Below are positions 8,991 through 35,094 of a stretch of DNA of 64,000 nt, piece after piece; the first letter of the stretch is position 1; every line of letters starts with the position of its first letter. The stretch spans positions 62,001 through 126,000 of the IMG/VR virus record IMGVR_UViG_3300036770_008729, one strand, 5' to 3'. A program made the translations under genes and the position numbers. The notes beneath the pieces are model-generated. The model was not told where the DNA came from. It worked only from the letters and a program-made list of their open reading frames with translations, and did not search any database.

Positions 8991-8994
8991 TATT

Positions 8995-10039: not shown

Positions 10040-10052
10040 TGCTTTTAAAAGC

Positions 10053-10221: not shown

Positions 10222-10533
10222 ATGGTGAAGAACGAAATCAAAATTGAGTTGTCAAACTCAGAAACCTTAAAATCAATTTTTGAAAAAGCTTACTTTGAAG
10301 AAGGAATTCAGGGTAAAATTATTGGAAAAAATAACTACATTACAATCATACCAGAAGATGATATTAATTGGACTATTTTTAAAGGTCTAAATAATGTTAC
10401 TGTTAAAATTACAAACGAAATCATCGATGGTGCTGCTCGATTCTTAATCGATGATACACATGATACTGAAATAAGATTATATCCTATTTCTATCTATTGT
10501 ATCAAAGAAGAAGATAGATATATCTTTTATTAA
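10222..10533 (+). CDS. hypothetical protein
   Basis: 103 aa ORF with a long A-rich leader. Confidence 0.7.
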   Translation: MVKNEIKIELSNSETLKSIFEKAYFEEGIQGKIIGKNNYITIIPEDDINWTIFKGLNNVTVKITNEIIDGAARFLIDDTHDTEIRLYPISIYCIKEEDRYIFY

Positions 10534-10548
10534 AAACAAAATTACCCT

Positions 10549-18191: not shown

Positions 18192-18775
18192 ATATAATAA
18201 TACTTGGTCCTCCTGGTAGTGGTAAAGGAACCGTTTGTGAAAGACTTGTAAAAGATTTTGATTATCAACTAATCTGTGCTGGTGATATTTTAAGAAATGA
18301 AAAATCATCTGGTTCGGTTTTAGGTAACAAAATTGCCGAAATAATTGATAAAGGTAATTTAGTTCCTGATCAATTGATAACTTCTTTAATATTCAAAGAG
18401 TTTGAAAAACCAATTCGACTCGGTAGAAGTTACTTAATTGATGGATATCCAAGAACAGAAAAACAAGCTTTAGATTTAGACTCGATGATTAATGTCCCTA
18501 TTGTTATTTGGTTAGAAGTTTCAGATGAAACAACTATAAAAAGAAATTTGAAAAGAGGATTAACATCTGGGCGACCTGATGATGCAAATGAGGAAATTAT
18601 AAAACAAAGATTAGAGAATTATAAAAAACAATCCTTACCTTTGAAATCTTTCTATTCTGATATGATAGTAGAAATAGATGGAGAAGGAACAATTGAAGAG
18701 GTTTATAAAAGAGTAGTTGATACTCTTTTTGAAGATGTAAAAGAAATGAAAGATATTGAAGATATATTAGAATGA
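18188..18775 (+). CDS. adk: adenylate kinase (short LID)
   Basis: GPPGSGKGT P-loop, GNLVPD, DGYPR, RGLTSGRPDD. Confidence 0.92.
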   Translation: MNIIILGPPGSGKGTVCERLVKDFDYQLICAGDILRNEKSSGSVLGNKIAEIIDKGNLVPDQLITSLIFKEFEKPIRLGRSYLIDGYPRTEKQALDLDSMINVPIVIWLEVSDETTIKRNLKRGLTSGRPDDANEEIIKQRLENYKKQSLPLKSFYSDMIVEIDGEGTIEEVYKRVVDTLFEDVKEMKDIEDILE

Positions 18776-20040
18776 ATATTAAGAGATACATACCAACCTA
18801 TGAAGAAGCTGTAGAGTTATCCTCTTTTTCTATGTCACCTTTTTATGAGACTAAATTGGTGGTTGATGGTTATAATGTGTCTTTATTTAACTATCGCTTG
18901 GCAAACTATGGTGATTTCAAAAATCCACTTCCCGGTAAAGAAGGATTTGAAATGAGAGGTCTTACTTTTGTATTCAATACTGATGGTTCTCTATACAAAA
19001 GATATATCTTATTACATAAATTTTTCAACTTAAATCAAACTGAAGATTCTCTTTATTCGGAAGTAAAAGATTTAAAAATTAAAACTATACAGAATAAAGA
19101 AGATGGTTCTATTGCTTCTTTTGTAAAACTACCTAATGGTAGAGTAGTTGGTAAAACTAAAATGGGATTTGATAATCTTCAATCTGAGGCAATCAATAGA
19201 ATCTATAATTCTAACAAAGAACTAAAGAAATTTGTTAATTGGTCATTAGATAATGATATAGTTTCAATTTTCGAATATGTGTCACCATCTAACAGAATTG
19301 TTTTAAAATATAATAAAGAAGAATTAATACTTCTTAAACTTCGTTGTAATAAAACTGGTAAGTATTTAAATATGCCTGATTATACTTTTCAGATCGGTAA
19401 TTTAAAAGTGGCTGAGTTTGAAATGTCTACTACTTTAGATGACGTTTTAAAACTTAATGAAACTGAAATTGACAAAGAAGGTAGGGTAATTCATTTTGAA
19501 GGAGACCATTTTGTTAAAGTAAAGAATAATTGGTATGTATCATTACATGGATTACTTACTGAAGACATCTATAAAGAAAATGTTATTATTTCAAACATCT
19601 TAGATGATAAGATAGATGATATAATTGGTCAGATACCACAAGATGATACCTATACTCATAACAGAATTAATAAAATAATCTCTATTGTGAAAAAGTCGGT
19701 CAATGACAAAGTGTCAGAAATAAATGACGCTTATCTACATTTTGTCAATTTAGGTATATCTAAAAAAGATTATGCTATCAATTACAGAATTGATAATGAT
19801 AACTTTGTTTTTGTTATGAATATGATAAAGCATAATGAATTGAAATCTCTTTCTGAAAAAGAAGTAATTGACATTTATAAAGATTATGATTCTTATGAGA
19901 AATCTTTAATAAGAACTGATGTTTGGGAAATGGCTAAAGAGTTTATTAGAGATAAAACCAAAAGACTATTGATTGCTAGAGATTGGTTAAAGGAAAAAGA
20001 CGATAATTTATTTTTTATAGATTTAGAAGGTGATAACTAA
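18772..20040 (+). CDS. T4 Rnl1-like RNA ligase
   Basis: EMRGLTF, HKFFNLNQ, motif I KEDGS, FEYVSPSNRIV, EGRVI, VKVKNNWYVSLH. Confidence 0.88.
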   Translation: MNIKRYIPTYEEAVELSSFSMSPFYETKLVVDGYNVSLFNYRLANYGDFKNPLPGKEGFEMRGLTFVFNTDGSLYKRYILLHKFFNLNQTEDSLYSEVKDLKIKTIQNKEDGSIASFVKLPNGRVVGKTKMGFDNLQSEAINRIYNSNKELKKFVNWSLDNDIVSIFEYVSPSNRIVLKYNKEELILLKLRCNKTGKYLNMPDYTFQIGNLKVAEFEMSTTLDDVLKLNETEIDKEGRVIHFEGDHFVKVKNNWYVSLHGLLTEDIYKENVIISNILDDKIDDIIGQIPQDDTYTHNRINKIISIVKKSVNDKVSEINDAYLHFVNLGISKKDYAINYRIDNDNFVFVMNMIKHNELKSLSEKEVIDIYKDYDSYEKSLIRTDVWEMAKEFIRDKTKRLLIARDWLKEKDDNLFFIDLEGDN

Positions 20041-20407: not shown

Positions 20408-22273
20408 ATGAGTAAAATTATTGGTATAGACTTAGGGAGTTACAACTCCGCAGTATCAGTTTACGAAGGAACTGAAGTAAAAATCATTCCTAATTCCGAG
20501 GGTGGATTAACCACTCCTTCTTATGTAGCATTTACAAAAGATGGTATTAAAGTTGGTGAACCTGCTAAAAGACAAGCAGCCGTTAATCCAGAAAAAACAA
20601 TTTTTAACATTAAGCGTTTAATGGGTAAAACTTGGGAACAAGTTAAAGACCTTAAAAGACCTTATAAAATTGTTAATTCTAATGGAAGACCTGGAGTTAA
20701 GATTGATGATAAGACCTATTCACCCGAAGAAATCTCAGCGATGATTATTCAGAAAATGAAAAAAACTGCTGAAGACTTTTTAGGACACGAAGTTAAAAAG
20801 GCTATCATTACAGTTCCTGCTCACTTTAATTCAGAAGAAAGACAAGCAACTAAACTTGCTGGTGAAATTGCTGGTCTTGAAGTAGAGCGTGTAATTGCCG
20901 AACCAACAGCTGCTATTTTGAATGTTGATTCAAAATCAGAAAAGAAGTATGCAGTTTATGACTTTGGTGGATGTACAATGGACTTGTCTATTGTAGATGT
21001 AGCTGATGGGGTGTTTGAAATTCTATCGACAGATGGTGATTTGGATTTAGGTGGTTCTTTGATTGATGAGAAAATCGTTAATTGGATAGCTGATGAATTC
21101 CAAAAGTCAGAGGGTCAAGATTTAAGAAAAGATCCTATGGCTCATCAAAGATTGTTTGAGGCGGCTGAAAAAGCAAAGATTGAATTATCCGGTTCGCAGA
21201 CCGCGGAAATCAATTTGCCTTACATTACATCTATCGATGGAGTTCCTAAACACTTAGTAAACTCCTTATCTAGATCAAAGTTTGAGCAATTGATTGATGA
21301 TATCGTTGAAAGAACAATTGACAAAGCAAAATCTGCACTTAAATCCTCTGGATTAAAAGTTGGTCAGATTGATGAAGTTTTGTTAGTTGGTGGTTCATCA
21401 AGAATTCCTTTAGCTCAAGATAAGTTAGAAAAACTTTTTGGTAAGAAACCATCTAAGTCACTTAACCCTGACACTTGTGTATCAACTGGTGCTACAATTC
21501 AAGGTGGTGTTATTACAGGTAATGTAACAGATGTTTTATTACTTGATGTTCTTCCTATCTCATTAGGTATTGAAACAATGGGTGGAGTTCTTACTAAATT
21601 AGTTGAAGCTAACACAACGATTCCGACTCGTAAATCGGAAACATTCTCAACGGCGTCTGATAATCAACCATCAGTAGAAATTAATGTTATACAAGGTGAG
21701 CGTCCAATGGCTAAAGATAATAAGTCATTAGGAAGATTTCACTTAGATGGTATTATGCCAGCACCTCGTGGAGTTCCTCAAGTAGAAGTAACTTTTGATA
21801 TCTCAGCTGATGGTATTCTTTCAGTATCAGCGAGAGATAAGGCTACCGGTAAAGAGAATAAGATTCGAATTGAAGGTAGTTCTAAACTTTCTAAAGAGGA
21901 AATCGAAAGAATGAAGGCAGAAGCTGAAGCTAACGCTGAGGTTGACCGCCTTGAAAAAGAAAAGGTTGAAAAGCTGAATATGGCTGATAGTATGATTTTC
22001 CAAACAGAAAAACAGATTAAGGAATTTTCAGACAAATTATCTGATGAAGATAAGAACTCTATCAACACTGATCTTGCAGCTCTTAAAGAAGTCCATTCTA
22101 GTAAAGAAATTGAAAAGATTGACGAAGCTATTAAGAAGCTAAATGAAACTTGGACTGCTATAAGCACTAAAATGTATCAAGCAACTCAAGAACAACCACA
22201 ACCGGAGTCAAATCCTAACTCTGGTGATGGAGGAGATAATGTCCAAGATACAACTTTCGAAGAGGTTAAGTAA
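20408..22273 (+). CDS. dnaK: DnaK/Hsp70 chaperone with divergent phosphate loops
   Basis: [44 protein letters not shown], full lid. Confidence 0.96.
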
Positions 22274-25032: not shown

Positions 25033-25547
25033 AAAGATTCTTTATTTTTATATCTTTCGTTTTGTTTTTTTTCTAAGTAAGCTTTCAAATCAGCATAAGA
25101 AACGTTACCAGGATTCTTCAAAATCATATCGGCATTTCCATCTGGTTTAGGTTCTAATTTTCTTAGTTCTTCTTTTTTCACTCTTTCTTCATACTCTTCC
25201 TCAACTCCTTTTAGAATAAATCCTAAAAATGAATCAACTCCTTTTTCTGAAACTTTTTCTTCATCCCACTGAAATAGAAACTCTTCGAAATTTGAATTAT
25301 AATATGCTGCAATTGTATTATCTTTCACATAGTGGTCAGTATAAAATCTGATGTCACCTACATTACCCTGTGCATAAAGTGTAGATTTGTATGTTGAATA
25401 ATAAAAATTGGCAAACTTATCCTTATCACTAATCATTCTTTTACCATTTTTGTCCATAGTAGAGGAAAGTCCTAGATTTACACGGAAGTACTTACTTTGT
25501 TTAAATTTATTGATTGTATGATATCCTGCGACAATATGTAGTGCCAT
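25029..25547 (-). CDS. hypothetical protein
   Basis: 172 aa, coupled to endolysin. Confidence 0.7.
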   Translation of the reverse strand: MALHIVAGYHTINKFKQSKYFRVNLGLSSTMDKNGKRMISDKDKFANFYYSTYKSTLYAQGNVGDIRFYTDHYVKDNTIAAYYNSNFEEFLFQWDEEKVSEKGVDSFLGFILKGVEEEYEERVKKEELRKLEPKPDGNADMILKNPGNVSYADLKAYLEKKQNERYKNKESL

Positions 25548-25567
25548 ACATTATTTATTAAAATGTA

Positions 25568-26182
25568 CTACTCCTCTTTATCTTCAGTTTCTATTCCTAA
25601 ATCTTCTTTATCATCAAACTTTTCATCAAGTTCTATTTTTAGTTCAATTAGAAACTCTTCTTTAATTTTCTTAATTTCTACATTTTTGGTAATTTGTCCT
25701 ATGATATCAAATGTATCAATATCATATTTTTTGAACTTTATATAACACTTTTGAATATCATCTTCACTAAAGTCCTTATTAGGATCTTTTGAGATACCTT
25801 CTTTCAAATCAATCATTATGATTAATGTGTAAGTAGCCATATCATCAGAAAATTTAACAGTGAGTGAATCATAAAGTTTAGAATATTTAGAAATTTCAGA
25901 ACTTTCTAATCTTACTCCCAAATCTTTGAAAGACATTTTTTCCTCTTCACCTTCTTCTTCGCCCTGTTCTTTTGCCTTTTTTATACTTTTTTCTTTTTTA
26001 GATTTCTTTTCCTCATCAAAGATATCATTTTGTGGATCTATAAAATCAGCAGATTCCTCATCATCCTCTTCAAACATTCTATCAATTTTTCTTTTGATCT
26101 TCATCAAAGCCATAGAAATATATGACTCAGGAGTATCATTCATACCCTCATTGATAAACTCTGTAAACTTTATTATTTTCAT
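25568..26182 (-). CDS. acidic protein with CTS-like N-terminus
   Basis: MKIIKFTEFINEG; AATATATA 6 nt upstream. Confidence 0.75.
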   Translation of the reverse strand: MKIIKFTEFINEGMNDTPESYISMALMKIKRKIDRMFEEDDEESADFIDPQNDIFDEEKKSKKEKSIKKAKEQGEEEGEEEKMSFKDLGVRLESSEISKYSKLYDSLTVKFSDDMATYTLIIMIDLKEGISKDPNKDFSEDDIQKCYIKFKKYDIDTFDIIGQITKNVEIKKIKEEFLIELKIELDEKFDDKEDLGIETEDKEE

Positions 26183-26262
26183 ATAATCTATATATTAAAA
26201 TCACTTTTCCATTTTTGAAAAAAAGAAAAATCTATATATACCAACAAAATCAAATTAATACT

Positions 26263-26415
26263 ATGCCTTTGCCATATTTCTCTTTTCTTCCTATGTATAA
26301 TAGGATTAGAATGAAAAAAATTAGAACAATATTCAATATCAATATGGATAATAGACTGGAGGAAAAATCTTCTGACAGTAAACTTAAAATGAGTACAAGT
26401 TTGTTTAGAAACTGA
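26263..26415 (+). CDS. possible 50 aa protein upstream of prkA
   Basis: MPLPYFSFLPMYNRIRMKK...; no independent support. Confidence 0.3.
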   Translation: MPLPYFSFLPMYNRIRMKKIRTIFNINMDNRLEEKSSDSKLKMSTSLFRN

Positions 26416-26499
26416 GAGTAGAAAAAAGAAAAATGTATATATACCTTATAGAACTTATTTATTTTAACTAAATATAAAATCAAAAAATAGCCTTAAAAC

Positions 26500-28422
26500 A
26501 TGAGCTTATTATCCACCATCAAAAAGAACTTTTCACAATCTGAAAAAGATATCTCAATCGAAGAGTATCTAAAACTATGTAAATCAGATAAAAAAACTTA
26601 TCTTTCTCCTGCTGAACGAATGCTTGACGCTATCGGTGAAGCTGAACTAATCGAAACTAAATTAGACGAAAGATTAAGTAGAATATACTCAAATAGAGTA
26701 ATAAAAAGATATCCAGCATTTTCTGAATTCTTTGGAATGGAAGATACAATCGAACAAATTGTTTCTTTCTTTAAACATGCCGCACAAGGTTTAGAAGAAA
26801 AGAAACAAATTCTTTATCTTTTAGGACCTGTTGGTGGTGGTAAATCATCATTGGCTGAAAGATTAAAACAATTAATGGAAAAAAGTCACATCTATGTTTT
26901 AGTTGCGAATGACGAGGTTTCTCCTGTTTGGGAAAACCCACTTGGTTTATTTTCATCATATAGAGAACAATTAGAAGAAGAATATGGAATTCCTAAAAGA
27001 TATGTTCCGTCTTGTCCTTCACCGTGGGCTACTAAAAGATTAGCTGAGTTTGATGGTGATATCACTAAATTCAAAGTTAGAAAACTTAAAATGTCTATTG
27101 CTTCTCAAATTGGTATTTCCAAAGTTGAACCAGGTGACGAAAATAATCAAGATATCTCTTCATTAGTAGGTAAAGTTGATATTAGAAAATTAGCCGAGTT
27201 CCCACAAAATGATGCTGACGCTTATTCATATTCAGGAGCACTCTGTAAATCTAATCAGGGTTTAATGGAATTTGTTGAGATGTTTAAGGCACCGATAAAA
27301 TTATTACATCCGCTATTAACAGCAACACAAGAAGGAAATTTTAATGGCACTGAAAATTTACCAGCTATTCCTTTTCAGGGTATTTTATTAGCTCACTCTA
27401 ATGAAAGTGAATGGGAAACTTTCTCAAATGATAAGAAGAATGAGGCTTTCTTAGATCGTGTTTATATTGTGAGAGTTCCTTATTGTTTAAGAGTTGATGA
27501 AGAAGTTCAGATTTATCAAAAACTCTTAAAACATTCTTCTCTTTCAGGTTCGTCTTGTGCTCCTCAAACATTAGATTTGCTTGCTGAATTCTGTGTTATG
27601 ACTAGACTTAAAAATCCAGAAAACTCTCTACTATATTCTAAAATGAGAGTCTATAATGGTGAAAACTTAAAAGAGTCTGATCCAAAAGCTAAATCTTTAC
27701 AAGAATATAAAGATGATGCCGGTATCACAGAAGGTATGTCTGGTATTTCAACTCGTTTTGCGTTCAAAGTTCTCTCTAAGGTATTCAATCACGATTCAGA
27801 AGAAGTGGCTGCTAATCCTGTTCATCTGTTTTATGTATTAGAGCATGAAATAATTAAAGCTCAAATGACTAAGGAAGTAGAAGATTATTACTTAAATATC
27901 TTAAAATCAACTTTAACTAGTAAATACGCTGAGTTTATCGGTGATGAAATACAAAAAGCTTATGTTGATTCTTATCAAGAATATGGTCAAAATCTATTTG
28001 AGAGATACATCACTTATGCTGACCACTGGTGCCAAGATAATGATTTCAGAGATCCTGAAACCGGACAACAATTTGATAGAGCTGCACTTAATGAAGAATT
28101 AGAAAAAATTGAAAAACCAGCTGGTATTGCTAATCCAAAAGATTTTAGAAATGATTTAGTTCAATTTTATCTAAGACACAAAGCTAAAAATGGTAAATCA
28201 CCATCTTGGGACTCTTATGAGAAAATTAAGAATGTTATTGAAAAAAGAATCTTCTCTAAAACAGAAGACCTTATTCCTGTTATTTCTTTCACATCTAAGG
28301 CATCCAAAGATGAACAAAAGAAACATTCTGAATTTGTTAATAGAATGAAAGATAGAGGTTACACTAATAAACAGATTAAATTACTCACTGACTGGTATTT
28401 AAGAATTAGGAAGTCAAATTAA
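26500..28422 (+). CDS. prkA: PrkA/YeaG family AAA+ ATPase / serine kinase
   Basis: EFFGMEDTIEQIV, ILYLLGPVGGGKSSLAE, PGDENNQDIS, GLMEFVEMFKAP, NEAFLDR, GMSGISTRF. Confidence 0.95.
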   Translation: MSLLSTIKKNFSQSEKDISIEEYLKLCKSDKKTYLSPAERMLDAIGEAELIETKLDERLSRIYSNRVIKRYPAFSEFFGMEDTIEQIVSFFKHAAQGLEEKKQILYLLGPVGGGKSSLAERLKQLMEKSHIYVLVANDEVSPVWENPLGLFSSYREQLEEEYGIPKRYVPSCPSPWATKRLAEFDGDITKFKVRKLKMSIASQIGISKVEPGDENNQDISSLVGKVDIRKLAEFPQNDADAYSYSGALCKSNQGLMEFVEMFKAPIKLLHPLLTATQEGNFNGTENLPAIPFQGILLAHSNESEWETFSNDKKNEAFLDRVYIVRVPYCLRVDEEVQIYQKLLKHSSLSGSSCAPQTLDLLAEFCVMTRLKNPENSLLYSKMRVYNGENLKESDPKAKSLQEYKDDAGITEGMSGISTRFAFKVLSKVFNHDSEEVAANPVHLFYVLEHEIIKAQMTKEVEDYYLNILKSTLTSKYAEFIGDEIQKAYVDSYQEYGQNLFERYITYADHWCQDNDFRDPETGQQFDRAALNEELEKIEKPAGIANPKDFRNDLVQFYLRHKAKNGKSPSWDSYEKIKNVIEKRIFSKTEDLIPVISFTSKASKDEQKKHSEFVNRMKDRGYTNKQIKLLTDWYLRIRKSN

Positions 28423-28439
28423 AAAATAGACCCAATTTT

Positions 28440-29702
28440 ATGTCTATTAATATTGTAGATAGGAGAAAAAATCCTAAGGGTAAATCCTCTGAAAACCGTC
28501 AGAGATTCCTTAAACGGATTGAAGGTCAAATAAAAAAGGCCCTGCCTGATATTGTAAAAAATACTAATGTAAAGGATATCACTGGTACCGGTGAGAAAAT
28601 TAAAGTTCCTGTAAAAGGAATTGGTGAGCCTCAGTTCTCTTATGATAGAGAATCTGGTAATAAAAAATATATTCACCCCGGGAATAAAGAATATGTTGAA
28701 GGTGATAAAATTAAAAAACCAGATGGTGGTGAAGGCAGAGGAAATGGAAGACAGGGCTCAAACGATCCAACCGTAACAGAAGATGAATTTACAGTTACAA
28801 TTAGTAGAGAAGAATTTTTAGATTATTTCTTTCAAGATTTGGAACTTCCAGATATGGTGAAAAAACATCTTAATTCTATTGTAGATTGGAAAAGAAAAAG
28901 AGCAGGTTACTCTTCTTATGGAAATCCAAGTAGATTAAATATCACAAGATCTTATAAAAACTCTATGGCTAGGAGAATGGCTGTTGGTATGTTCTTTGAT
29001 AAGAAAATAAAAGAAATTGAAGATAAACTTAAACTCAATCCACCAGATGATGAGAGATTAAAATTAGAAACAGAATTAGATAAACTTAAAAAAATGAAAC
29101 TATCTGTCTCATTTATGGAAGAGGTAGATCTTCAATATAACAACTTTGAGAAATATCCAGTTCCAGTAACATCAGCAGTAATGTTTTGTATTATGGATAT
29201 ATCTGGTTCAATGGGTGAAAAAGAAAAAGATATCTCTAAACGATTTTTTATGCTTCTTTATATGTTCCTAACTAAACAATATGAGAGGATTGAAATTGTT
29301 TTTATCAGACACCACACAGAAGCAAAAGAAGTTGATGAACAAGAATTCTTCAACTCAAAGGAAAGTGGTGGTACTGTGGTTCTTCCAGCTCTCGAATTAA
29401 TGAAAAAGATAATTGATGAGAGATATGCACAAAATTGGAATATCTATGCGGCACAAGCTTCTGATGGTGATGTTTGGAATAAATCAGATGCTGATAATTG
29501 TTATAAGATATTAGATGTTGATTTATTGAATAGAGTTCAATATATGGTTTATATTGAGGTTTGTAGGAGAAATGATGGAGATTTGTGGGGAAATTATAAT
29601 TTGTTGGCGCAAAAGAAAAAGAATTTTCAGATAGGGAAAATATCGGAAGTTAGTGAGATATGGAAAGTGTTTCAAGACTTCTTCAAAAAGAAAGTTGCAT
29701 AG
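28440..29702 (+). CDS. yeaH: YeaH/YhbH family vWA-domain protein
   Basis: IVDRRKNPKGKS..NRQRFL, PGNKEYVEGDKI, MFCIMDISGSMG (MIDAS), FIRHHTEAKEVDEQEFF, ESGGT, QASDGD. Confidence 0.93.
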   Translation: MSINIVDRRKNPKGKSSENRQRFLKRIEGQIKKALPDIVKNTNVKDITGTGEKIKVPVKGIGEPQFSYDRESGNKKYIHPGNKEYVEGDKIKKPDGGEGRGNGRQGSNDPTVTEDEFTVTISREEFLDYFFQDLELPDMVKKHLNSIVDWKRKRAGYSSYGNPSRLNITRSYKNSMARRMAVGMFFDKKIKEIEDKLKLNPPDDERLKLETELDKLKKMKLSVSFMEEVDLQYNNFEKYPVPVTSAVMFCIMDISGSMGEKEKDISKRFFMLLYMFLTKQYERIEIVFIRHHTEAKEVDEQEFFNSKESGGTVVLPALELMKKIIDERYAQNWNIYAAQASDGDVWNKSDADNCYKILDVDLLNRVQYMVYIEVCRRNDGDLWGNYNLLAQKKKNFQIGKISEVSEIWKVFQDFFKKKVA

Positions 29703-29703
29703 A

Positions 29704-31200
29704 ATGAAAAAATCAGAGATAAAAAAACTTCTTAGTAAATCCGATTGGAATGAACATACAATAAGAGTGTTTATTGAAATAATTGATAGAATATCAAAAG
29801 AACACCTTAATTTAGATGTTTATCCTAATCAATTTGAGATTGTTTCATCTGAGCAACTTCTTGATGCTTACGCCTCAATAGGACTCCCTATTTCATATAA
29901 CCATTGGAAGTATGGAAAAGATTTTGTTATAAATCAAAATCAATATAAAAAGGGTAGAATGGGTCTTTCTTATGAAATGGTAATTAATTCTAATCCATGT
30001 ATCTCCTATAACTTAGAAGATAATGATACTTGTTTAATGACTTTGGTTTATGCACATGTACAGGGACACAATCATTTCTTTAAGAACAATTACCTTTTCA
30101 AGCAATGGACTCAGGCAGATTCAATTATTGATTATATGTTATTTGCTAGAAACTTTATTTCCAAATGTGAAGAGAAATATGGATATGAAGAAGTTGAAAT
30201 GGTATTAGATTCTTGCCACGCTCTTATGAACTATGGTGTTGATAAATATAAAAAACCAAAAAAATTAACACCCAAAGAAGAAGCTGAAAGATTAAAGAAG
30301 AAATTAGAAGATGATAGAGTTTTAGTGGATGATATTTGGAGAACACTTCCAAAAGAAGAAGAAAAGAAAAAGAAGAAAATCAAATTCCCAGAACAACCTG
30401 AGGAAAACATTCTTTATTTTATCCAGAAAAACTCACCTATACTTAAAGAGTGGCAAAGAGAAATAATTAGAATTGTAAGAAAAACCGCACAATATTTTTA
30501 TCCACAAGGTCAAACCAAAGTTATTAACGAAGGAACGGCGACTTTTACTCATGTTGAAATCATCAATAAAATGTATGAAGAAGGTTATTTAGATGATGGA
30601 TTTATGCAAGAATTTCTACACCATCATTCTAATGTTGTATATCAACCAGGATTTGATTCTAAATACTATTCTGGACTTAATCCTTATACTTTGGGTTATA
30701 ATATCTTTAAGGATATAAAAAGAATGTCTATTGATCCAACGATTGAAGATTTGCATTGGTTTCCGGATATTGCTGGAAAGGGAAATTGGAAAGAAGTATT
30801 TCTTTATGCGGTTGAGAACTTTAAGGATGAAACTTTTATTTTACAATATTTGTCTCCAAGAGTGATGAGAGATATGAAATTGTTTGAGATAACGGATTAT
30901 GAGGAAGCGCCAAACTATGAAGTATCTTCAATTCATAATGAAAAGGGATATAAAAGAATAAGACAAACTTTATCTGAATTTTACAATCGTAATAGATATG
31001 TTCCAGATATACAGGTTTATAATGTTGATATAACTGGTAATAGAGGATTAACTTTGGAATATACACCTAATGATGCAAAAGAGTTGGATGTAAAAGAGGT
31101 TGATAAGGTGTTGCCTCATATTAAGTTTCTATGGGGATTTCCGGTAAAGATAATTAAGAAGTCTTATGGAAAAATTCATACAATTTCTACAACGGATTAG
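29704..31200 (+). CDS. spoVR: SpoVR/YcgB family protein
   Basis: GLPISYNHWKYGK, YEMVINSNPC, AHVQGHNHFFKNN, KVINEGTATFTH, NPYTLG, LWGFPV; start reassigned to ATG 29704. Confidence 0.93.
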   Translation: MKKSEIKKLLSKSDWNEHTIRVFIEIIDRISKEHLNLDVYPNQFEIVSSEQLLDAYASIGLPISYNHWKYGKDFVINQNQYKKGRMGLSYEMVINSNPCISYNLEDNDTCLMTLVYAHVQGHNHFFKNNYLFKQWTQADSIIDYMLFARNFISKCEEKYGYEEVEMVLDSCHALMNYGVDKYKKPKKLTPKEEAERLKKKLEDDRVLVDDIWRTLPKEEEKKKKKIKFPEQPEENILYFIQKNSPILKEWQREIIRIVRKTAQYFYPQGQTKVINEGTATFTHVEIINKMYEEGYLDDGFMQEFLHHHSNVVYQPGFDSKYYSGLNPYTLGYNIFKDIKRMSIDPTIEDLHWFPDIAGKGNWKEVFLYAVENFKDETFILQYLSPRVMRDMKLFEITDYEEAPNYEVSSIHNEKGYKRIRQTLSEFYNRNRYVPDIQVYNVDITGNRGLTLEYTPNDAKELDVKEVDKVLPHIKFLWGFPVKIIKKSYGKIHTISTTD

Positions 31201-31220
31201 TTTTTTTAGATATTTATTCA

Positions 31221-31228
31221 TATATTTG
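31221..31228 (+). promoter_or_regulatory. TAnnTTTG element 4 nt before uvsE ATG
   Basis: TATATTTG. Confidence 0.6.
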
Positions 31229-31232
31229 TATT

Positions 31233-32159
31233 ATGGGTAATATAGGTTATTGTTGCATAAACCTTTCAATAAATGAAGGTAGAAAAAAGAAAGACCACAT
31301 CTCTGTTAATAGAGGTATGACTAAAAAAACATTTGAGACAAAAGGTCTTTCTTATGTCTCTGAACTAGCTATACAAAATATTAATGACTTACAAAAGATA
31401 TTAGAATGGAATGTTAAGAATAAGATATTTGTTTATAGAATGTCTAGTGATATGTTTCCATGTATAGGATTTTATAAACTAGAAAACCTTCCTCGTTTCG
31501 CAGCAATTTCTCAAAAATTGAAAGCAATTGGTGATTACGCTAAAATTAATTCTATCCGACTTTCTTTTCACCCAACTCATTTCTGTATTCCCGCTAGTGA
31601 GAATCCAATAGTTGTAACAAATGCAATTGATGAATTAGATAAACATGCTCAAATAATGGATATTATGGGTTTAGAACAAACACACTTCTATCCTATAAAC
31701 ATACATGTAAATACTACTAAACCGACCAGAGAAGAAGCAGCTGATAGATTTTGCAAACAGTTTTGGAATTTAAGCGAGTCTTGTAGAAAGAGATTAGTAG
31801 TAGAAAATGATGATGGTCCTAACCAGTATTCTACAAAGATGTTATATGATTTAATTTATACAAAAATTGGAGTTCCCATAACTCATGACTTTCATCACCA
31901 TAACTATGGACCACAAGATATTTCACAGGAAGAAGCACTTAAACTTGCCCATTCTACTTGGAATGGCATTAAACCAATGACTCATATGAGTTCTCCAAAA
32001 ACATTAGAAGATAATTCAGGAAAACAAACAGCACATGCAGATTACATATATGAAGAAATTAAAACTTATGGTCTTGACTTTGATACAGAAATTGAGGCAA
32101 AAGCCAAAGACCTTGCGGTATTCAGATACAGAAAACAATTTCAGATACTCAAAGGGTGA
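31233..32159 (+). CDS. uvsE: UV-damage endonuclease (UvsE/UVDE)
   Basis: IGYCCIN, YRMSSDMFP, RLSFHP, LVVENDD, DFHHH, AHADY, EIEAKAKD. Confidence 0.92.
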   Translation: MGNIGYCCINLSINEGRKKKDHISVNRGMTKKTFETKGLSYVSELAIQNINDLQKILEWNVKNKIFVYRMSSDMFPCIGFYKLENLPRFAAISQKLKAIGDYAKINSIRLSFHPTHFCIPASENPIVVTNAIDELDKHAQIMDIMGLEQTHFYPINIHVNTTKPTREEAADRFCKQFWNLSESCRKRLVVENDDGPNQYSTKMLYDLIYTKIGVPITHDFHHHNYGPQDISQEEALKLAHSTWNGIKPMTHMSSPKTLEDNSGKQTAHADYIYEEIKTYGLDFDTEIEAKAKDLAVFRYRKQFQILKG

Positions 32160-32457
32160 TCGCTTTATCACTAATGATGGTATCGGTTATGTTAAATTTG
32201 AAGTTGGTGAGAAAGTCATAGTTGATGAAATTATCTATGGTGAAGAAAAAGTAGGAGTTGTTATCGATATAAATGCACGATATGTAGTTCCTGAGATTGA
32301 GCAGAGTTGGAAGGTAGAATACTTAGTTATATTCAATCTAAAGACAGGTGATAATATCTACATACAGCCTACTAAAAAATGGCTTACTGATGTGGATTTA
32401 AGAAAATGGTCATTGGATGAAGAAAGAGAATGGAAATTAAATAATATACTATCATAA
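32035..32457 (+). CDS. hypothetical KOW/SH3-like protein with REWKLNNIL tail (start uncertain)
   Basis: FEVGEKVIV; annotated start overlaps uvsE extensively. Confidence 0.55.
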   Translation: MQITYMKKLKLMVLTLIQKLRQKPKTLRYSDTENNFRYSKGDRFITNDGIGYVKFEVGEKVIVDEIIYGEEKVGVVIDINARYVVPEIEQSWKVEYLVIFNLKTGDNIYIQPTKKWLTDVDLRKWSLDEEREWKLNNILS

Positions 32458-32726
32458 TGAGTTACAAAATTATACATTTAGGAGAAGGTCAATTTCAAGC
32501 TGTTATGGATAACGGTGAAATTAAAGAAGTTGGAAATAACATTAAAGGAATGATAAGATACACATTCTTTGAGGATTATAGTTTCCCACCAATTGATTGG
32601 GAAATAACACAAAAAGAGCTATTAGAAACTTATCATCCAAAAGTTCTGGCTGATATAGCAAGTGGTAAAATTAAACCAAGTAAAGAAAAACCAGAAGATA
32701 ATTCTGATTGGATAGAAATAATATAA
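32457..32726 (+). CDS. hypothetical protein
   Basis: 89 aa, coupled. Confidence 0.65.
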   Translation: MSYKIIHLGEGQFQAVMDNGEIKEVGNNIKGMIRYTFFEDYSFPPIDWEITQKELLETYHPKVLADIASGKIKPSKEKPEDNSDWIEII

Positions 32727-32735
32727 AATATTTAA

Positions 32736-33293
32736 ATGCAAATTAAAATACATATCGTACATTGTCAAGATTCTGATACACTTAGAATCATTCAAGACCA
32801 TGAATTAAAGAAAAACAAAACTCCTAAATTAAATGATGGATACATTTTAGTAAGGGAATGGTTTGATGATGATAGTTATGATTATAGAGAAGTTCCAGTT
32901 ACAATTGAACAAACCTTTTTAGTTATTACTAAAGGTGAGTTCATAAGAAATGATAAGAATTCATCAAAGTTAAATGCCTACTATATGTCTGGGGGTTTTG
33001 CCGAAGTCAATAGATTGGCTTATTCTTATTCTGTTAATGTTATTCTATGTGACGGAAATTGGACTTTATATGAAAATGACTTAGTTTATTCTAAGTCTGG
33101 AATAAAGGCAACTACAGGTAGTATGTATTCATATCATTTGAATGAGCCTGAGCAAATGTATATTGAGGATCTATTAGACTATGAAGTTTGGCAAAGTTTA
33201 AATCTTACAGATATTCTAAAATCCTATTTGACTCAATCCGAAATAAGAGATAGTAAAATTGATAAAATATTAGATAATGAGAGTGATACATAA
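32736..33293 (+). CDS. hypothetical protein with RDSKIDKIL tail
   Basis: 185 aa. Confidence 0.7.
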   Translation: MQIKIHIVHCQDSDTLRIIQDHELKKNKTPKLNDGYILVREWFDDDSYDYREVPVTIEQTFLVITKGEFIRNDKNSSKLNAYYMSGGFAEVNRLAYSYSVNVILCDGNWTLYENDLVYSKSGIKATTGSMYSYHLNEPEQMYIEDLLDYEVWQSLNLTDILKSYLTQSEIRDSKIDKILDNESDT

Positions 33294-33516
33294 ATCTAAT
33301 TTTGAAGACAGACCATATGTCTTAAAGACATCATTAATGTTTGTTGAGGATAATAAAATATGTGATGGGTGTGATAGACACGGAGTAAGATGTGCCTCAA
33401 TAAAACTCCTAAAAGGAGATGTTTCAATTCTTTGCCAAGATTGTATTGAGGGAATTTTAGATAGCTTAGACCCAGCTATAGTTAGAGATATTAAAATAGA
33501 TAAGATATTGGAATGA
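33277..33516 (+). CDS. zinc-finger protein with RDIKIDKIL tail
   Basis: CDGC...CQDC. Confidence 0.7.
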   Translation: MRVIHKSNFEDRPYVLKTSLMFVEDNKICDGCDRHGVRCASIKLLKGDVSILCQDCIEGILDSLDPAIVRDIKIDKILE

Positions 33517-33734
33517 ATGTAATTTGTATAAATAAAGGAAAGATAAAAAATCTCACAGAAGGTCGAAGATATCAAATAGTTAAAAAAAATAGTGGATTTC
33601 ACTTTGGATCTGATATTCCTTACTCCAATATGTGGATAATTAATGATGCTGGAATTGAAAAACACTATTCATCTAAAAGATTTTTAACAATCTCCGAATT
33701 CAGAAATATCAAAATAGATTCTATATTAAAATGA
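33513..33734 (+). CDS. small SH3-like protein with RNIKIDSIL tail
   Basis: VICI...LTEGRRY...NDAG...YSSKRF; paralog of next gene. Confidence 0.7.
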   Translation: MNVICINKGKIKNLTEGRRYQIVKKNSGFHFGSDIPYSNMWIINDAGIEKHYSSKRFLTISEFRNIKIDSILK

Positions 33735-33937
33735 TAGTTATTTGTACAGATGTGGACAATGTAGGTTCTGATATGAAATTATCACTTACAATAGGGAAAT
33801 CATATAAGGTCATTAGAGAAAATAATATAGGATTTTATTTAGAAGATGACCGTGGTTCTATTCAATGGTATTCTAAATGGAGGTTCAGTAGGTCAGAGTG
33901 GAGAGATAATCAAATAGATAAAATATTATTTACTTAG
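33731..33937 (+). CDS. small SH3-like protein with RDNQIDKIL tail
   Basis: VICT...LTIGKSY...DDRG...YSKWRF. Confidence 0.7.
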   Translation: MIVICTDVDNVGSDMKLSLTIGKSYKVIRENNIGFYLEDDRGSIQWYSKWRFSRSEWRDNQIDKILFT

Positions 33938-35094
33938 AATTTTTCTATCTCAATTCTTTTAATCTCTTCACCGAGTTCTTTTCCTTTAAATCCTTTATCC
34001 ATTAAGTCCTTAACCGATACGGTTGGTTTCCAATCAACAAATTTAATTATATTAATGTCTTTGATTTTACAGACATCAATCCATTCTAATATAGTAGAAT
34101 CTTTTATATGACAACCTAATTTGAGTTTATAAATATCAATTAATTGTTCTGGTTTGAATGATTGTAGTCTTAATAAAAATTCAACTTTGTTTGCTACTTC
34201 TCCTTCAATTTTGTATTCATCTATTAATTTTTTTGATAACCCTACAGGATTTTCTAATTTAAATAAATGTGATATCACTACAACAAAATCTTTACTATTT
34301 ATTGTAATTGTGTTGATAGAAGCTCCTGGAAAAACTTCATCCCACATATCAAATTTTGTAAAGAAATTTAAGTAATGATTAAAATCTTTCGCCTGAGACC
34401 AAGCCTTCTTAAACTCTTCCCATATTCTTTCCGCTGATATTCTTTTAATCTTACCAGTCTCTGGATCTATATTAGATAGTTGTTTTCTCTTTTCAATTGC
34501 CCTTTCCGTATCTTTATGTAGAGGATGTCCATATCTCGATGCGAATCTAAAGGCTCTTAAAATTCTAAGTGAATCTTCATCAAATCTTTCGACTGGATCA
34601 CCAACCATACGAGTTATTCCACTTTCTAAATCTTGCCTTCCACCTACCAAATCAACCACTTCTTTTTTATCTAAATCATAAAATAAAGAGTTGTAAGTGA
34701 GGTCACGACGCTTGACATCATCTTCAATGGTAACACCTAATTTAACTTCAGGATTTCTTCCCTTAGAAATGTCTTGTCTAAAAGTAGCGATTTCCATTCC
34801 ACCTGGTTGATCGTCAGTGTAGACAACTACTACACCGAAAGCTTTACCTTGTAAGTTAAAGTCATAGTTGTATGATTGTAGTATTTTAATAACCTCATCA
34901 GGAAGAGCATCGGTTGCTAAGTCAAAGTCTTTTGGTTTATCACCAGTTAGGAAATCACGAACTGATCCACCAACTAAATATAGTTTTTTACCAGCTTTTC
35001 TAAAAATGTTATTCAAATCTTTAACTGATTTTGGAATATAATCCCACATATCCGTTTTTGACTCCAAAAACTGTTCATACTTTTTTAATTTCAT
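33934..35094 (-). CDS. cca: class II CCA-adding tRNA nucleotidyltransferase with CTS-like N-terminal extension
   Basis: LVGGSVRD, DFDLAT, EIATFR, DDVKRRDLT, FDEDSLRILRAFRF, ISAERIWEE; starts MKLKKYEQFLES. Confidence 0.9.
   Translation of the reverse strand: MKLKKYEQFLESKTDMWDYIPKSVKDLNNIFRKAGKKLYLVGGSVRDFLTGDKPKDFDLATDALPDEVIKILQSYNYDFNLQGKAFGVVVVYTDDQPGGMEIATFRQDISKGRNPEVKLGVTIEDDVKRRDLTYNSLFYDLDKKEVVDLVGGRQDLESGITRMVGDPVERFDEDSLRILRAFRFASRYGHPLHKDTERAIEKRKQLSNIDPETGKIKRISAERIWEEFKKAWSQAKDFNHYLNFFTKFDMWDEVFPGASINTITINSKDFVVVISHLFKLENPVGLSKKLIDEYKIEGEVANKVEFLLRLQSFKPEQLIDIYKLKLGCHIKDSTILEWIDVCKIKDINIIKFVDWKPTVSVKDLMDKGFKGKELGEEIKRIEIEKF

What the first reader, a model, noticed from the sequence alone, without database searches (positions are those of the whole stretch)
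26500..31200. Intact PrkA(YeaG)-YeaH-SpoVR(YcgB) operon in a phage
Seen: three full-length, tightly spaced genes with intact Walker A (GPVGGGKS), MIDAS-like DISGS and the SpoVR HxxGHxHFF/NEG motifs, with AT-rich codons like their neighbours. Established: this trio co-occurs in bacteria and is tied to stationary phase, nitrogen starvation and sporulation; its biochemistry is poorly defined, and AAA+/vWA pairs often act as remodelling chaperones. Inference: the phage carries a whole dormancy or starvation-control module to manipulate host physiology, or uses it as a protein-remodelling machine. This is a strong candidate for an undescribed phage system.
Basis: partly seen in the sequence, partly recalled or inferred. 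Interest (0 to 1): 0.75.

Follow-up and report, generated by a model that had tools for sequence, protein, structure and literature searches.

The report
Bacterial starvation-response trio in huge phage
A large freshwater phage that probably infects Bacteroidota carries an intact, well-conserved copy of the bacterial PrkA-YeaH-SpoVR stress module. The same trio also sits in several unrelated large phages, some of them cultured, so it is a real and recurrent phage feature that nobody has studied, not a new kind of system.

Summary
Window 26500-28422, 28440-29702 and 29704-31200 (+) encode full-length PrkA (AAA_PrkA plus PrkA C-terminal domain), YeaH (DUF444, with a vWA C-terminal half) and SpoVR.

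The DNA is phage, not host. The window is collinear over about 49 kb with a curated 634-kb phage genome. The trio sits at the same place in at least 14 independent IMG/VR contigs. Near-identical DNA recurs in at least 19 metagenome runs. Within the phage clade dN/dS is 0.02-0.13.

The phage copies keep 92-96% of the columns that are invariant in bacteria. Their closest bacterial relatives are Cytophagales (Bacteroidota). A T9SS-tagged protein and leaders without Shine-Dalgarno sequences point to the same host phylum, where SpoVR was found in only 6 of 401 sampled genomes.

"Undescribed" is overstated. Thermus phage phiYS40 (GenBank DQ997624), phiLo and Ralstonia jumbo phage RsoM2USA (2021) already carry and annotate these genes, and a clade of RsoM2USA-like jumbo phages has them too. 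None has been tested.

Models predict that YeaH binds SpoVR (0.77 against 0.00 in controls) and that SpoVR has a zincin-like fold.

The most likely role is a captured host-physiology module that imposes a starvation-like metabolic brake. This role is inferred, not shown.

The parts
26224..26242 (+). First copy of a 19-nt direct repeat (AGAAAAATCTATATATACC) in the 317-nt intergenic region upstream of prkA
   Evidence: two exact copies in the window, 0.21 expected by chance at the 3-mismatch setting used; these are the only two copies in the 281-kb record. Function unknown.
26427..26445 (+). Second copy of the direct repeat, 203 nt downstream of the first and 55-73 nt before the prkA ATG
26452..26479 (+). 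Promoter-like element AACTTA-N15-TATAAAA, 21-48 nt upstream of prkA
   Evidence: A similar AAACTTA-N17/18-GTATAA(A/T)T element lies upstream of prkA in 7 of 11 aligned relatives. This is a consensus resemblance only; no transcription start has been mapped.
26500..28422 (+). prkA / yeaG: AAA+ ATPase (AAA_PrkA) with a PrkA C-terminal domain, 640 aa
   Evidence: Pfam 5.7e-168 and 8e-67. Walker A at 109-116 and K423; 66-69% identical to bacterial PrkA; 83-90% identical to copies in related phage contigs. PDB 9xip 'Serine protein kinase', E 7e-55.
28440..29702 (+). yeaH / yhbH: DUF444 protein, 420 aa. The N-terminal arm is predicted to bind SpoVR; the C-terminal half is a vWA domain with a DxSxS MIDAS motif.
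   Evidence: DUF444 at 1.3e-147. AF2 model, residues 150-420 confident; 172 PDB matches at E<=1e-3, all vWA domains in the rows listed, probability 1.00; interface residues 3-26, 61-93 and 117-120.
29704..31200 (+). spoVR / ycgB: SpoVR plus SpoVR_C, 498 aa from the ATG (the ORF is open from GTG 29653). The core is predicted to be zincin-like.
   Evidence: 7.3e-151. AF2 pLDDT 83.7; every one of the top 50 structural matches among 48,161 PDB chains is a zincin-fold protein, Z 5.4-11.6.
31233..32159 (+). uvdE (UV-damage endonuclease), co-directional and 32 nt after spoVR. It is probably in the same transcription unit but is not part of the trio.
   Evidence: UvdE at 8.1e-49; it follows spoVR in most relatives (L016-L020, L022-L024, L028), sometimes after a 0.3-2 kb insert; no terminator-like site on the + strand between 25500 and 34500.

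Best explanation
This is a complete, working copy of the bacterial PrkA(YeaG)-YeaH(YhbH)-SpoVR(YcgB) stress module. An ancestor of a clade of low-GC freshwater and subsurface huge phages captured it from a Bacteroidota (Cytophagales-like) bacterium, and the phages have inherited it ever since.

The three proteins most likely act as one ATP-driven complex:
- PrkA is the AAA+ motor.
- YeaH is a vWA adaptor whose N-terminal arm clasps SpoVR.
- SpoVR is a zincin-fold, probably metal-dependent, partner.

The phage copies keep almost every residue that is invariant across bacterial phyla. They therefore presumably act on the same conserved cellular targets as the bacterial system. In E. coli that system quiesces metabolism during nitrogen starvation and delays regrowth.

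The phage would then use the trio as a host-takeover module. It would hold the infected cell, probably from a lineage that lacks the module, in a viable, starvation-like, metabolically braked state during a long infection in nutrient-poor water.

Shown: identity, integrity, phage context, origin, selection.
Predicted by models: YeaH-SpoVR binding, the vWA fold, the zincin-like fold.
Inferred: that the three form one complex, the target, and the physiological role.
For: Identity and integrity.

Phage context:
- 78% nucleotide identity to LR745206.1, one of three 634-642 kb uncultured-phage records hit. The circularised 634-kb genome is described in PMC7162821.
- Collinear with that genome from window 13.8 kb to 62.9 kb. 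Flanking proteins are 40-75% identical; the trio, at 85/76/74%, is the best-conserved part.
- T4-type topoisomerase II, an RNA ligase, virion and baseplate proteins and homing endonucleases are in the record.
- At least 14 low-GC IMG/VR contigs from different samples carry the same trio.
- Near-identical DNA is present in at least 19 runs from 11 studies.

Selection: dN/dS is 0.02-0.13 in all three genes.

Origin:
- YeaH and SpoVR are 52-56% and 56-61% identical to Cytophagales, against 42-46% and 49-53% to Gammaproteobacteria.
- In the concatenated tree the 10-row phage clade (support 100*) is sister to a group made of Cytophagales plus a second viral pair (100*).

Host phylum:
- A Por_Secre_tail (T9SS) protein lies at 4270-8769.
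- Only 2% of ORFs have an SD-like motif.
- The more-than-634-kb relatives were predicted to infect Bacteroidetes.

Rarity in the host phylum: SpoVR was found in 6 of 401 Bacteroidota genomes and in 19 of 151 genomes of the order of Rapidithrix.

Complex and folds:
- YeaH+SpoVR ipSAE 0.77, best control 0.00. That mark was reached by 58 of 80 solved complexes and 2 of 110 mismatched pairs.
- vWA fold. Zincin-like fold.

Function of the bacterial system:
- yeaG, yeaH and ycgB are cofit in six bacteria (10.1101/072470).
- YeaG/YeaH act as a 'metabolic brake' that depends on K426 (PMC10954441).

Recurrence in other large phages:
- RsoM2USA.
- A 25-row IMG/VR clade. Three of its contigs (342, 322 and 202 kb) encode a TerL 40% identical to RsoM2USA's, E about 1e-112.
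- Thermus phages.

Hint of transcription: metatranscriptome contigs 98-99% identical, one spanning the prkA-yeaH junction.
Against: - No functional data exist for any phage copy.
- The biochemical activity of the bacterial system is itself disputed. Kinase activity is reported for YeaG. A weak protease activity is reported for B. subtilis PrkA. Neither activity was detected in pure B. anthracis PrkA (PMC13001217).
- Phenotypes of the bacterial trio differ between species, so 'metabolic brake' may not transfer.
- The host is unknown. If it is one of the Cytophagales that have the trio, the phage copy would duplicate a host function, not add one.
- The RNA evidence has no DNA-contamination control.
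- IMG/VR labels the record 'provirus'.
- DnaK, DnaJ and a Lon-like protease elsewhere in the genome fit a proteostasis role just as well.
- The tree is a quick LG+G4 search with a midpoint root and flagged compositional heterogeneity.
- PrkA was not included in the complex prediction because of the size limit.
Confidence: 0.5

Rival explanations
1. The trio works for the phage itself. It would be an ATP-driven remodelling or processing machine (AAA+ motor, vWA adaptor, zincin-like subunit) that matures, assembles or degrades phage proteins. It would form part of a phage-encoded proteostasis set rather than manipulate host physiology.
For: - The AAA+ plus vWA architecture is confirmed, as are the zincin-like SpoVR fold and the predicted YeaH-SpoVR complex.
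- The same genome encodes DnaJ and DnaK 4-12 kb upstream and a Lon-like ATP-dependent protease (phrog_4871).
- Carriers are mostly very large phages with complex virions.
Against: - The phage proteins keep 92-96% of the columns invariant across Bacteroidota and Gammaproteobacteria, and the changes are conservative. That is expected if the targets are conserved cellular components, not lineage-specific phage proteins.
- Unrelated phages (Thermus myophages, RsoM2USA-like jumbo phages, this clade) share no obvious common client.
- Some Thermus carriers are only 69-77 kb.
Confidence: 0.2
2. The trio serves in conflict. It would protect the infected cell against superinfecting phages, or counter a host abortive-infection or dormancy defence, by controlling entry into or exit from growth arrest.
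For: - Large phages commonly carry such functions (general knowledge).
- The bacterial module controls growth arrest and recovery.
- The trio has been acquired repeatedly by unrelated large phages.
Against: - None of the three proteins, nor UvdE, matches PADLOC models.
- I found no report linking the bacterial trio to phage defence.
- No defence-like genes were recognised next to it.
Confidence: 0.1
3. The trio is not a phage feature at all. It would be host DNA, from a chimeric assembly, a provirus flank, or a very recent neutral pick-up.
For: - IMG/VR classes the 281-kb record as 'provirus'.
- Pfam models for the T4-type capsid, portal and terminase, and the RsoM2USA TerL, found nothing in the record.
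- One GenBank 'phage' hit (Enterobacter phage LAU1) has YeaG/YeaH at the very end of a 30.8-kb record and looks like a host flank.
Against: - The trio lies 88-93 kb into the record, with phage genes on both sides.
- Gene order is the same in a circularised 634-kb phage genome and in many independent contigs.
- GC is uniform at 0.28-0.33 along the record.
- The closest bacteria are only 66-69% identical in PrkA and have 41-56% GC.
- Synonymous sites are near saturation between phage copies while dN/dS stays at or below 0.13. That indicates long residence in phages under selection.
Confidence: 0.02

Closest known systems
E. coli YeaG-YeaH plus YcgB (NtrC/RpoS-controlled stress module)
   Same: - The same three Pfam families at full length.
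- PrkA is about 66% identical to enterobacterial YeaG.
- Walker A, K426 (K423 here) and the MIDAS motif are conserved.
- The three genes are cofit in six bacteria.
   Different: - This copy is encoded by a phage, as one tight block. E. coli has two operons.
- There is no evidence here for sigma-54 or RpoS control. A phage-clade-specific promoter-like motif sits upstream instead.
- YeaH and SpoVR are only 40-50% identical to the proteobacterial versions.
Cytophagales (Bacteroidota) prkA-yeaH-spoVR operons (Pontibacter, Rapidithrix, Rhodocytophaga, Nafulsella and others)
   Same: - These are the nearest cellular relatives: 67-69% (PrkA), 52-56% (YeaH) and 56-61% (SpoVR) identical.
- Gene order is the same.
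- They are the sister group in the tree.
   Different: - Bacterial GC is 41-56%, against 30% here.
- Bacterial intergenic gaps are larger, 60-770 nt.
- The phage clade is a separate, long-diverged branch.
Ralstonia jumbo phage RsoM2USA ORF30-ORF29-ORF28, and related IMG/VR jumbo phages
   Same: - A cultured phage with the same three genes in the same order.
- A clade of IMG/VR contigs of up to 342 kb with a related terminase also has the trio.
   Different: - These are a different phage lineage; this genome has no match to their TerL.
- Their trio groups with Gammaproteobacteria, not Bacteroidota.
- Identities are 57/40/50%.
- The paper lists SpoVR under replication and PrkA under signalling, and does not treat them as a unit.
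Thermus phages phiYS40, TMA, phiLo, MN1 and Lalka
   Same: - Cultured phages carrying PrkA, a DUF444 protein and SpoVR next to each other. All three were confirmed in phiLo.
- phiYS40 is annotated with SpoVR and a serine kinase in record DQ997624.
   Different: - The type is distant, with PrkA only 26-29% identical.
- Gene order differs (DUF444-SpoVR-PrkA).
- phiYS40 has an extra 616-aa ORF between SpoVR and PrkA.
- Genomes are smaller (69-179 kb) and the host is a thermophile.
AAA+/vWA machines (MoxR-vWA pairs, Mg- and Co-chelatases) and FtsH/YME1-type AAA+ zincin proteases
   Same: - The working logic matches: an AAA+ ATPase, a vWA/MIDAS adaptor, and a third metal-site protein.
- PrkA has been classed with clade III AAA+ proteins such as YME1 (PMC13001217).
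- SpoVR's predicted fold matches zincin catalytic domains.
   Different: - PrkA matches AAA_PrkA, not the MoxR AAA+ families.
- SpoVR lacks the HExxH glutamate; it has HVQGH here and HAxxGH elsewhere.
- There is no sequence-level link to any solved zincin.
- No protease activity was seen for pure PrkA.

Membership tests
PrkA/YeaG - YeaH/YhbH - SpoVR/YcgB conserved module | PrkA-type protein with an N-terminal AAA_PrkA domain (intact Walker A) and a PrkA C-terminal domain | tested here: met
   PF08298 at 5.7e-168 over positions 2-357 of 358, and PF06798 at 8e-67. GPVGGGKS at 109-116, and 284 of 297 invariant columns kept. K423 corresponds to E. coli K426.
PrkA/YeaG - YeaH/YhbH - SpoVR/YcgB conserved module | DUF444 protein with a vWA domain and a MIDAS DxSxS motif | tested here: met
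   PF04285 at 1.3e-147, full length. DISGS at 253-257; the model's C-terminal half matches vWA domains (172 PDB hits at E<=1e-3).
PrkA/YeaG - YeaH/YhbH - SpoVR/YcgB conserved module | SpoVR-family protein with its C-terminal domain and conserved His and NEG motifs | tested here: met
   PF04293 at 7.3e-151 and PF24755 at 2.4e-17; 145 of 157 invariant columns kept; a one-residue deletion between the two invariant His, shared with three relatives.
PrkA/YeaG - YeaH/YhbH - SpoVR/YcgB conserved module | The three genes are adjacent and co-directional in the order prkA-yeaH-spoVR | tested here: met
   gaps of 17 and 1 nt; the same order in about 130 bacterial and viral loci.
PrkA/YeaG - YeaH/YhbH - SpoVR/YcgB conserved module | The three proteins act together (cofitness, physical association) in stress or starvation adaptation | tested here: inconclusive
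   only a model supports YeaH-SpoVR binding (0.77 against 0.00), and PrkA was not included. The physiology cannot be tested with these tools.
Phage auxiliary / host-takeover gene set (host-derived genes fixed in a phage lineage) | Lies inside a bona fide phage genome, flanked by phage genes, at a conserved position in relatives | tested here: met
Phage auxiliary / host-takeover gene set (host-derived genes fixed in a phage lineage) | Cellular origin, followed by retention under purifying selection in the phage | tested here: met
   sister to the Cytophagales group; dN/dS 0.02-0.13.
Phage auxiliary / host-takeover gene set (host-derived genes fixed in a phage lineage) | Expressed during infection and changes host physiology | tested here: inconclusive
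   short contigs 98-99% identical in three metatranscriptome runs from one study, with no DNA control. The effect on the host cannot be tested here.
MoxR-type AAA+ / vWA chaperone pairs | AAA+ partner belongs to the MoxR families | tested here: not met
   the window PrkA matches AAA_PrkA and, below cut-off, AAA_16 only. A weak sub-threshold bpMoxR match was seen only in the Thermus phage homologue. PMC13001217 places PrkA in AAA+ clade III.
Zincin (HExxH) metallopeptidases, considered for SpoVR | Thermolysin-like zincin catalytic fold | tested here: inconclusive
   all top-50 matches are zincin-fold proteins, Z up to 11.6 over 160-214 residues. That Z range is within the grey zone the tool states for helical proteins. 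Foldseek found nothing significant.
Zincin (HExxH) metallopeptidases, considered for SpoVR | HExxH zinc-binding and catalytic motif | tested here: not met
   the conserved motif is AH(A/V)xx(x)GH, with no glutamate after the first His; the profile search against PDB sequences gave no hit.
Known anti-phage defence systems (PADLOC) | Match to a PADLOC protein model | tested here: not met
   no family at E<=0.01 for any of the four proteins.

The most novel reading that the evidence does not exclude
The trio could be a self-contained, three-piece AAA+ metalloprotease or protein-processing machine. PrkA would be an FtsH/YME1-like unfoldase. SpoVR would be an atypical zincin-fold catalytic subunit. 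YeaH would be the vWA bridge, with its N-terminal arm in or along SpoVR.

Large phages from at least three unrelated lineages would then have captured this machine independently. They would use it to impose a starvation-like arrest on hosts, most of which (for the Bacteroidota phage here) lack it.

This reading would reconcile the conflicting reports on PrkA protease activity. It would also make cultured phages such as RsoM2USA and phiYS40 a simple genetic handle on a module whose biochemistry has not been resolved.
Probability: 0.15. Interest if true: 0.8.

Novelty: new member of a known kind. Interest (0 to 1): 0.5.

Why it matters
PrkA-YeaH-SpoVR is one of the most widely conserved bacterial and archaeal gene trios whose biochemistry is still unsettled.

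This analysis shows that large phages have taken it up more than once. One uptake is of Bacteroidota type, one of Proteobacteria type and one of Thermus type. The phages keep it under strong purifying selection with the bacterial invariant residues intact. This implies that the module confers a benefit during infection and acts on conserved cellular targets.

Phage copies offer a compact system that can be switched on or off, and some are in cultured phages. They can be used to ask what the trio does.

Here the trio also sits in a phage of a phylum where it is rare, so the phage may bring a growth-arrest controller into cells that lack one. That is relevant to how huge phages cope with starved hosts in lakes and groundwater.

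The predictions that YeaH binds SpoVR and that SpoVR has a zincin-like fold are testable leads on the mechanism.

Tried and rejected
- Pfam Gp23, Terminase_6C and Portal_T4 searched against the whole 281-kb record: no match. RsoM2USA TerL also found nothing in it. I therefore did not identify this phage's capsid, portal or terminase. Phage identity rests on synteny with LR745206.1 and on other phage genes.
- Sigma-70 promoter scan: 38 sites against 51.6 expected, so uninformative. All four terminator-like sites are on the minus strand.
- PADLOC: no hits.
- Foldseek of the SpoVR model against PDB: nothing at E<=1e-3. The SpoVR profile against PDB sequences gave no hit even at E<=10. Single-sequence PDB searches for YeaH and SpoVR gave nothing meaningful.
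- PHROG scans of the flanks of the second IMG/VR clade were not decisive. The TerL search settled that three of those contigs are jumbo phages. A fourth (L085) gave only E=0.01, so it is unverified.
I rebuilt the alignment without them.
- The literature search 'phiYS40 + serine kinase' returned nothing. The search 'YeaG + YeaH' was swamped by the word 'yeah'. No paper was found for PDB 9xip.
- I considered and rejected contamination or chimerism (see rivals).
- I considered that Enterobacter phage LAU1 shows a small temperate phage carrying YeaG/YeaH. I rejected it as a probable host flank at the record end. This was not verified.
- A PrkA+YeaH complex prediction was not possible: 1060 residues exceeds the 1000 limit and only one job was allowed.

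Full report
OBSERVATION

- prkA is at 26500-28422 (640 aa).
- yeaH is at 28440-29702 (420 aa).
- spoVR ends at 31200. Its ORF is open from GTG 29653. The ATG at 29704, one base after the yeaH stop, is the likely start, because all homologues align from there.

Pfam gives full-length matches:
- AAA_PrkA 5.7e-168 plus PrkA C-terminal domain 8e-67
- DUF444 1.3e-147
- SpoVR 7.3e-151 plus SpoVR_C 2.4e-17

The lysine whose mutation inactivates E. coli YeaG (K426; PMC10954441) is conserved as K423. GC is 0.30-0.31, the same as the surroundings.

I took the alignment columns that are at least 98% invariant in 77-80 bacterial homologues. The window keeps 284 of 297 in PrkA, 97 of 105 in YeaH and 145 of 157 in SpoVR, and the changes are conservative.

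IS IT REALLY A PHAGE?

The window is bases 62001-126000 of a 281,114-bp IMG/VR record. IMG/VR labels it 'provirus', and CheckV puts it at 94% complete. Several lines of evidence show that the trio is phage DNA.

1. The trio region is 78% identical at the DNA level to LR745206.1, one of three 634-642 kb uncultured-phage records it matches. The 634-, 636- and 642-kb genomes are among the manually curated, circularised genomes of Al-Shayeb et al. 2020. All genomes above 634 kb were predicted to infect Bacteroidetes (PMC7162821).

2. Window ORFs from 13.8 kb to 62.9 kb are collinear with that genome. Flanking proteins are 40-75% identical. The trio, at 85/76/74%, is the best-conserved part of the block.

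3. The record encodes T4-type topoisomerase II subunits, an RnlA-like RNA ligase, virion structural and baseplate-wedge proteins and several homing endonucleases.

4. Fourteen low-GC (27-34%) IMG/VR contigs carry a PrkA 83-90% identical to the window's. YeaH and SpoVR follow it wherever the contig extends far enough. Several contigs share the upstream amidase and conserved hypothetical genes and the downstream uvdE.

5. Near-identical DNA, sharing 31-100% of sampled 31-mers, occurs in at least 19 freshwater, lake, marine and subsurface metagenome runs from 11 studies.

6. GC is flat at 0.28-0.33 along the whole record.

I could not find the capsid, portal or terminase with Pfam models or with the RsoM2USA TerL, so those genes remain unidentified. 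The 'provirus' label and the 94% estimate sit oddly with relatives of 634-642 kb. The record has no terminal overlap and may be a fragment.

ORIGIN AND SELECTION

The best bacterial PrkA matches are 66-69% identical. They are a mix of Cytophagales (Bacteroidota) and Gammaproteobacteria.

YeaH and SpoVR evolve faster and discriminate between the two groups. They are 52-56% and 56-61% identical to Cytophagales, against 42-46% and 49-53% to Gammaproteobacteria.

I built a concatenated tree of 86 loci with IQ-TREE. It was a quick search under LG+G4 with SH-aLRT support and a midpoint root, and some rows were flagged for compositional heterogeneity. In it the window's clade is a starred group of 10 viral rows. 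It is sister (100*) to a group made of 9 Cytophagales plus a second low-GC viral pair.

Within the phage clade, synonymous sites are near saturation (dS 0.3 to above 2) while dN/dS is 0.02-0.13 for all three genes. The capture is therefore old, and the genes have been maintained by selection inside phages.

HOST

Three independent hints point to Bacteroidota.
- The trio's nearest cellular relatives are Bacteroidota.
- A 1499-aa protein at 4270-8769 (-) carries a Por_Secre_tail type IX secretion sorting domain.
- Shine-Dalgarno-like motifs are almost absent: 2% of 265 ORFs have one, against 7% of random 17-mers. Leaders are A-rich. The trio's own leaders follow the same pattern.

The module is rare in that phylum. 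SpoVR was found in 6 of 401 evenly drawn genomes, and in 19 of 151 genomes of the order that contains Rapidithrix. Unless the host is one of those Cytophagales, the phage brings in a function the cell lacks. This last step is inference.

TRANSCRIPTION UNIT

The gaps are 17, 1 and 32 nt. No terminator-like site lies on the + strand from 25500 to 34500. The trio, uvdE and several small ORFs down to 33937 may therefore be one unit.

Upstream of prkA lies a 317-nt AT-rich spacer containing:
- a 19-nt direct repeat, present exactly twice in the whole record;
- an AACTTA-N15-TATAAAA element, whose counterpart AAACTTA-N17/18-GTATAAAT is seen upstream of prkA in 7 of 11 aligned relatives.

Three freshwater metatranscriptome runs from one study contain short contigs 98-99% identical to prkA. 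One spans the prkA-yeaH junction (28226-28446) and one covers the start of uvdE. This is a hint of transcription in nature, but there was no DNA control.

NOT UNIQUE AND NOT UNDESCRIBED

A tblastn search of GenBank phages finds PrkA in 17 records.
- Ralstonia jumbo phage RsoM2USA has ORF30-29-28 in the same order. Its paper lists PrkA and SpoVR in a table under different functional headings (PMC8504454).
- Thermus phages phiYS40, TMA, phiLo, MN1 and Lalka carry a distant type, 26-29% identical. phiLo has DUF444-SpoVR-PrkA. The phiYS40 record (GenBank DQ997624) annotates 'SpoVR' and 'serine kinase'.

In IMG/VR, 127 contigs hold a PrkA relative. A 25-row clade that is sister to Gammaproteobacteria includes contigs of 342, 322 and 202 kb. 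Each encodes a terminase 40% identical to RsoM2USA's, at E about 1e-112. These are genuine jumbo phages of another lineage.

The trio has therefore entered large phages at least three times: once as a Bacteroidota type, once as a Proteobacteria type and once as a Thermus type. I found no paper that treats it as a phage module.

MECHANISM

What the bacterial system does:
- In E. coli, YeaG/YeaH quiesce metabolism in nitrogen starvation and lengthen the lag on recovery, and this depends on K426 (PMC10954441).
- The biochemistry is disputed. Kinase activity is reported for YeaG. A weak protease activity is reported for B. subtilis PrkA. Neither was found in pure B. anthracis PrkA, which was classed with clade III AAA+ proteins such as YME1 (PMC13001217).

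What I could add:
- The YeaH model is disordered alone over residues 1-146. Its C-terminal half is a clear vWA fold, with 172 PDB matches at E<=1e-3.
- The SpoVR model (pLDDT 83.7) has no significant Foldseek match. In a Foldseek-independent comparison with 48,161 PDB chains, however, all top-50 matches are zincin-fold proteins: DUF885, M1/LTA4H, M3, M4, M13, M32, M49 and ACE. Z is 5.4-11.6 over about 160-214 residues. The absolute Z lies in the tool's stated grey zone for helical proteins. The uniformity of the list is the argument. SpoVR lacks the HExxH glutamate.
- A complex prediction of YeaH with SpoVR scored 0.77, against 0.00 for all three controls. That mark was reached by 58 of 80 solved complexes and 2 of 110 mismatched pairs, and the counts hold only roughly because I used my own alignments. 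The YeaH N-terminal arm (3-26, 61-93, 117-120) wraps SpoVR and leaves the vWA domain free.

I therefore propose one complex: AAA+ motor, vWA adaptor and zincin-like partner. The phage copies keep the bacterial invariant positions, so the targets are most likely conserved cellular proteins. This favours a host-physiology role, a starvation-like metabolic brake during a long infection in oligotrophic water, over a phage-specific assembly role. The genome also encodes DnaK, DnaJ and a Lon-like protease, so the proteostasis rival stays alive. PADLOC gives no support to a defence reading.

VERDICT

It is not undescribed, and its function is untested. It is a new member of a known kind.

Interest is moderate (0.5). 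The trio's recurrence in several large-phage lineages is worth following up. So are its rarity in the likely host phylum and the structural leads (YeaH-SpoVR binding, zincin-like SpoVR). Cultured carriers exist in which all of this can be tested.

Noticed in passing
window 4270-8769 (-): A 1499-aa protein with PKD-like, proprotein-convertase P and Ig-like domains and a C-terminal Por_Secre_tail (type IX secretion sorting) domain. T9SS is a Bacteroidota feature, so this is a host-phylum marker carried by the phage.
   Followed up: partly
window 13819-14895 (-), 20408-22273 (+), 870-1853 (+); genome 27826-29994 (L003:7826-9994): Phage-encoded DnaJ, DnaK/Hsp70 (714 bits) and an SPFH/Band-7 protein lie near the trio. 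A Lon-like ATP-dependent protease (phrog_4871, 836 bits) lies elsewhere in the record. Together they form a sizeable proteostasis set.
   Followed up: no
L183 (LR756504.1) about 9688-10074, inside spoVR at 8851-10752: The SpoVR of this 636-kb phage carries an in-frame insert of about 129 aa that looks like a mini-intein. It starts CLVEGSLI and ends INHN, and the next residue is Cys. It sits exactly at the invariant NEG|C motif. Inteins tend to sit in critical sites, which fits NEG being functionally important.
   Followed up: partly
L028 5603-6448; L017 11290-12780 (-): In some relatives the yeaH-spoVR junction is interrupted. L028 has a GIY-YIG/NUMOD homing endonuclease there. L017 has a 496-aa antisense ORF with no Pfam match.
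   Followed up: partly
LR756502.1: prkA-yeaH at about 273.8-277.1 kb, spoVR at about 520.0-521.4 kb (L184 4962-6461): In this 642-kb relative, spoVR lies about 246 kb away from prkA-yeaH, next to a homologue of window 55360-58977. The trio need not be contiguous, as in E. coli.
   Followed up: partly
window 29704-31200, SpoVR residues 117-122: The window, L016, L025 and L028 have a one-residue deletion between the two invariant histidines (AHVQ-GH). Other homologues, including clade members L018, L022 and L027, have AHAxxGH. The patchy distribution within the clade suggests allele exchange.
   Followed up: no
window 26224-26242 and 26427-26445 (+): An exact 19-nt direct repeat, differing at one degenerate position, occurs twice in the prkA upstream spacer and nowhere else in the 281-kb record. 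It is not conserved as such in relatives.
   Followed up: partly
whole record G000 (281,114 bp): Shine-Dalgarno-like motifs are almost absent upstream of ORFs (2% against 7% in random sequence), and leaders are A-rich. The IMG/VR 'provirus' label and the CheckV 94% estimate sit oddly with relatives of 634-642 kb. There is no terminal overlap.
   Followed up: partly
window 41764-43611 (-) and 51306-52655 (+); 18772-20040 (+); 33934-35094 (-): T4-type topoisomerase II large and medium subunits lie on opposite strands about 8 kb apart. There is also an RnlA-like RNA ligase and a PolyA_pol/CCA-adding-type nucleotidyltransferase.
   Followed up: no
L021 (IMGVR_UViG_3300005662_007764, 14.5 kb): This locus has GC 0.47 overall, yet at its very end it holds a PrkA 87% identical to the low-GC phage copy. 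It may be a chimeric contig.
   Followed up: no
L015 (Enterobacter phage LAU1, MN688132.1, 1-3308): YeaG and YeaH lie at the extreme end of a 30.8-kb lambdoid 'complete genome', next to tail-fibre genes, at 53% GC. This is probably host flank left in a prophage-derived record, not a phage-borne copy.
   Followed up: no
LR756511.1 about 343.6-349.0 kb: A 595-kb uncultured phage carries adjacent PrkA and SpoVR of the distant type, 26-28% identical, like the Thermus phages.
   Followed up: no
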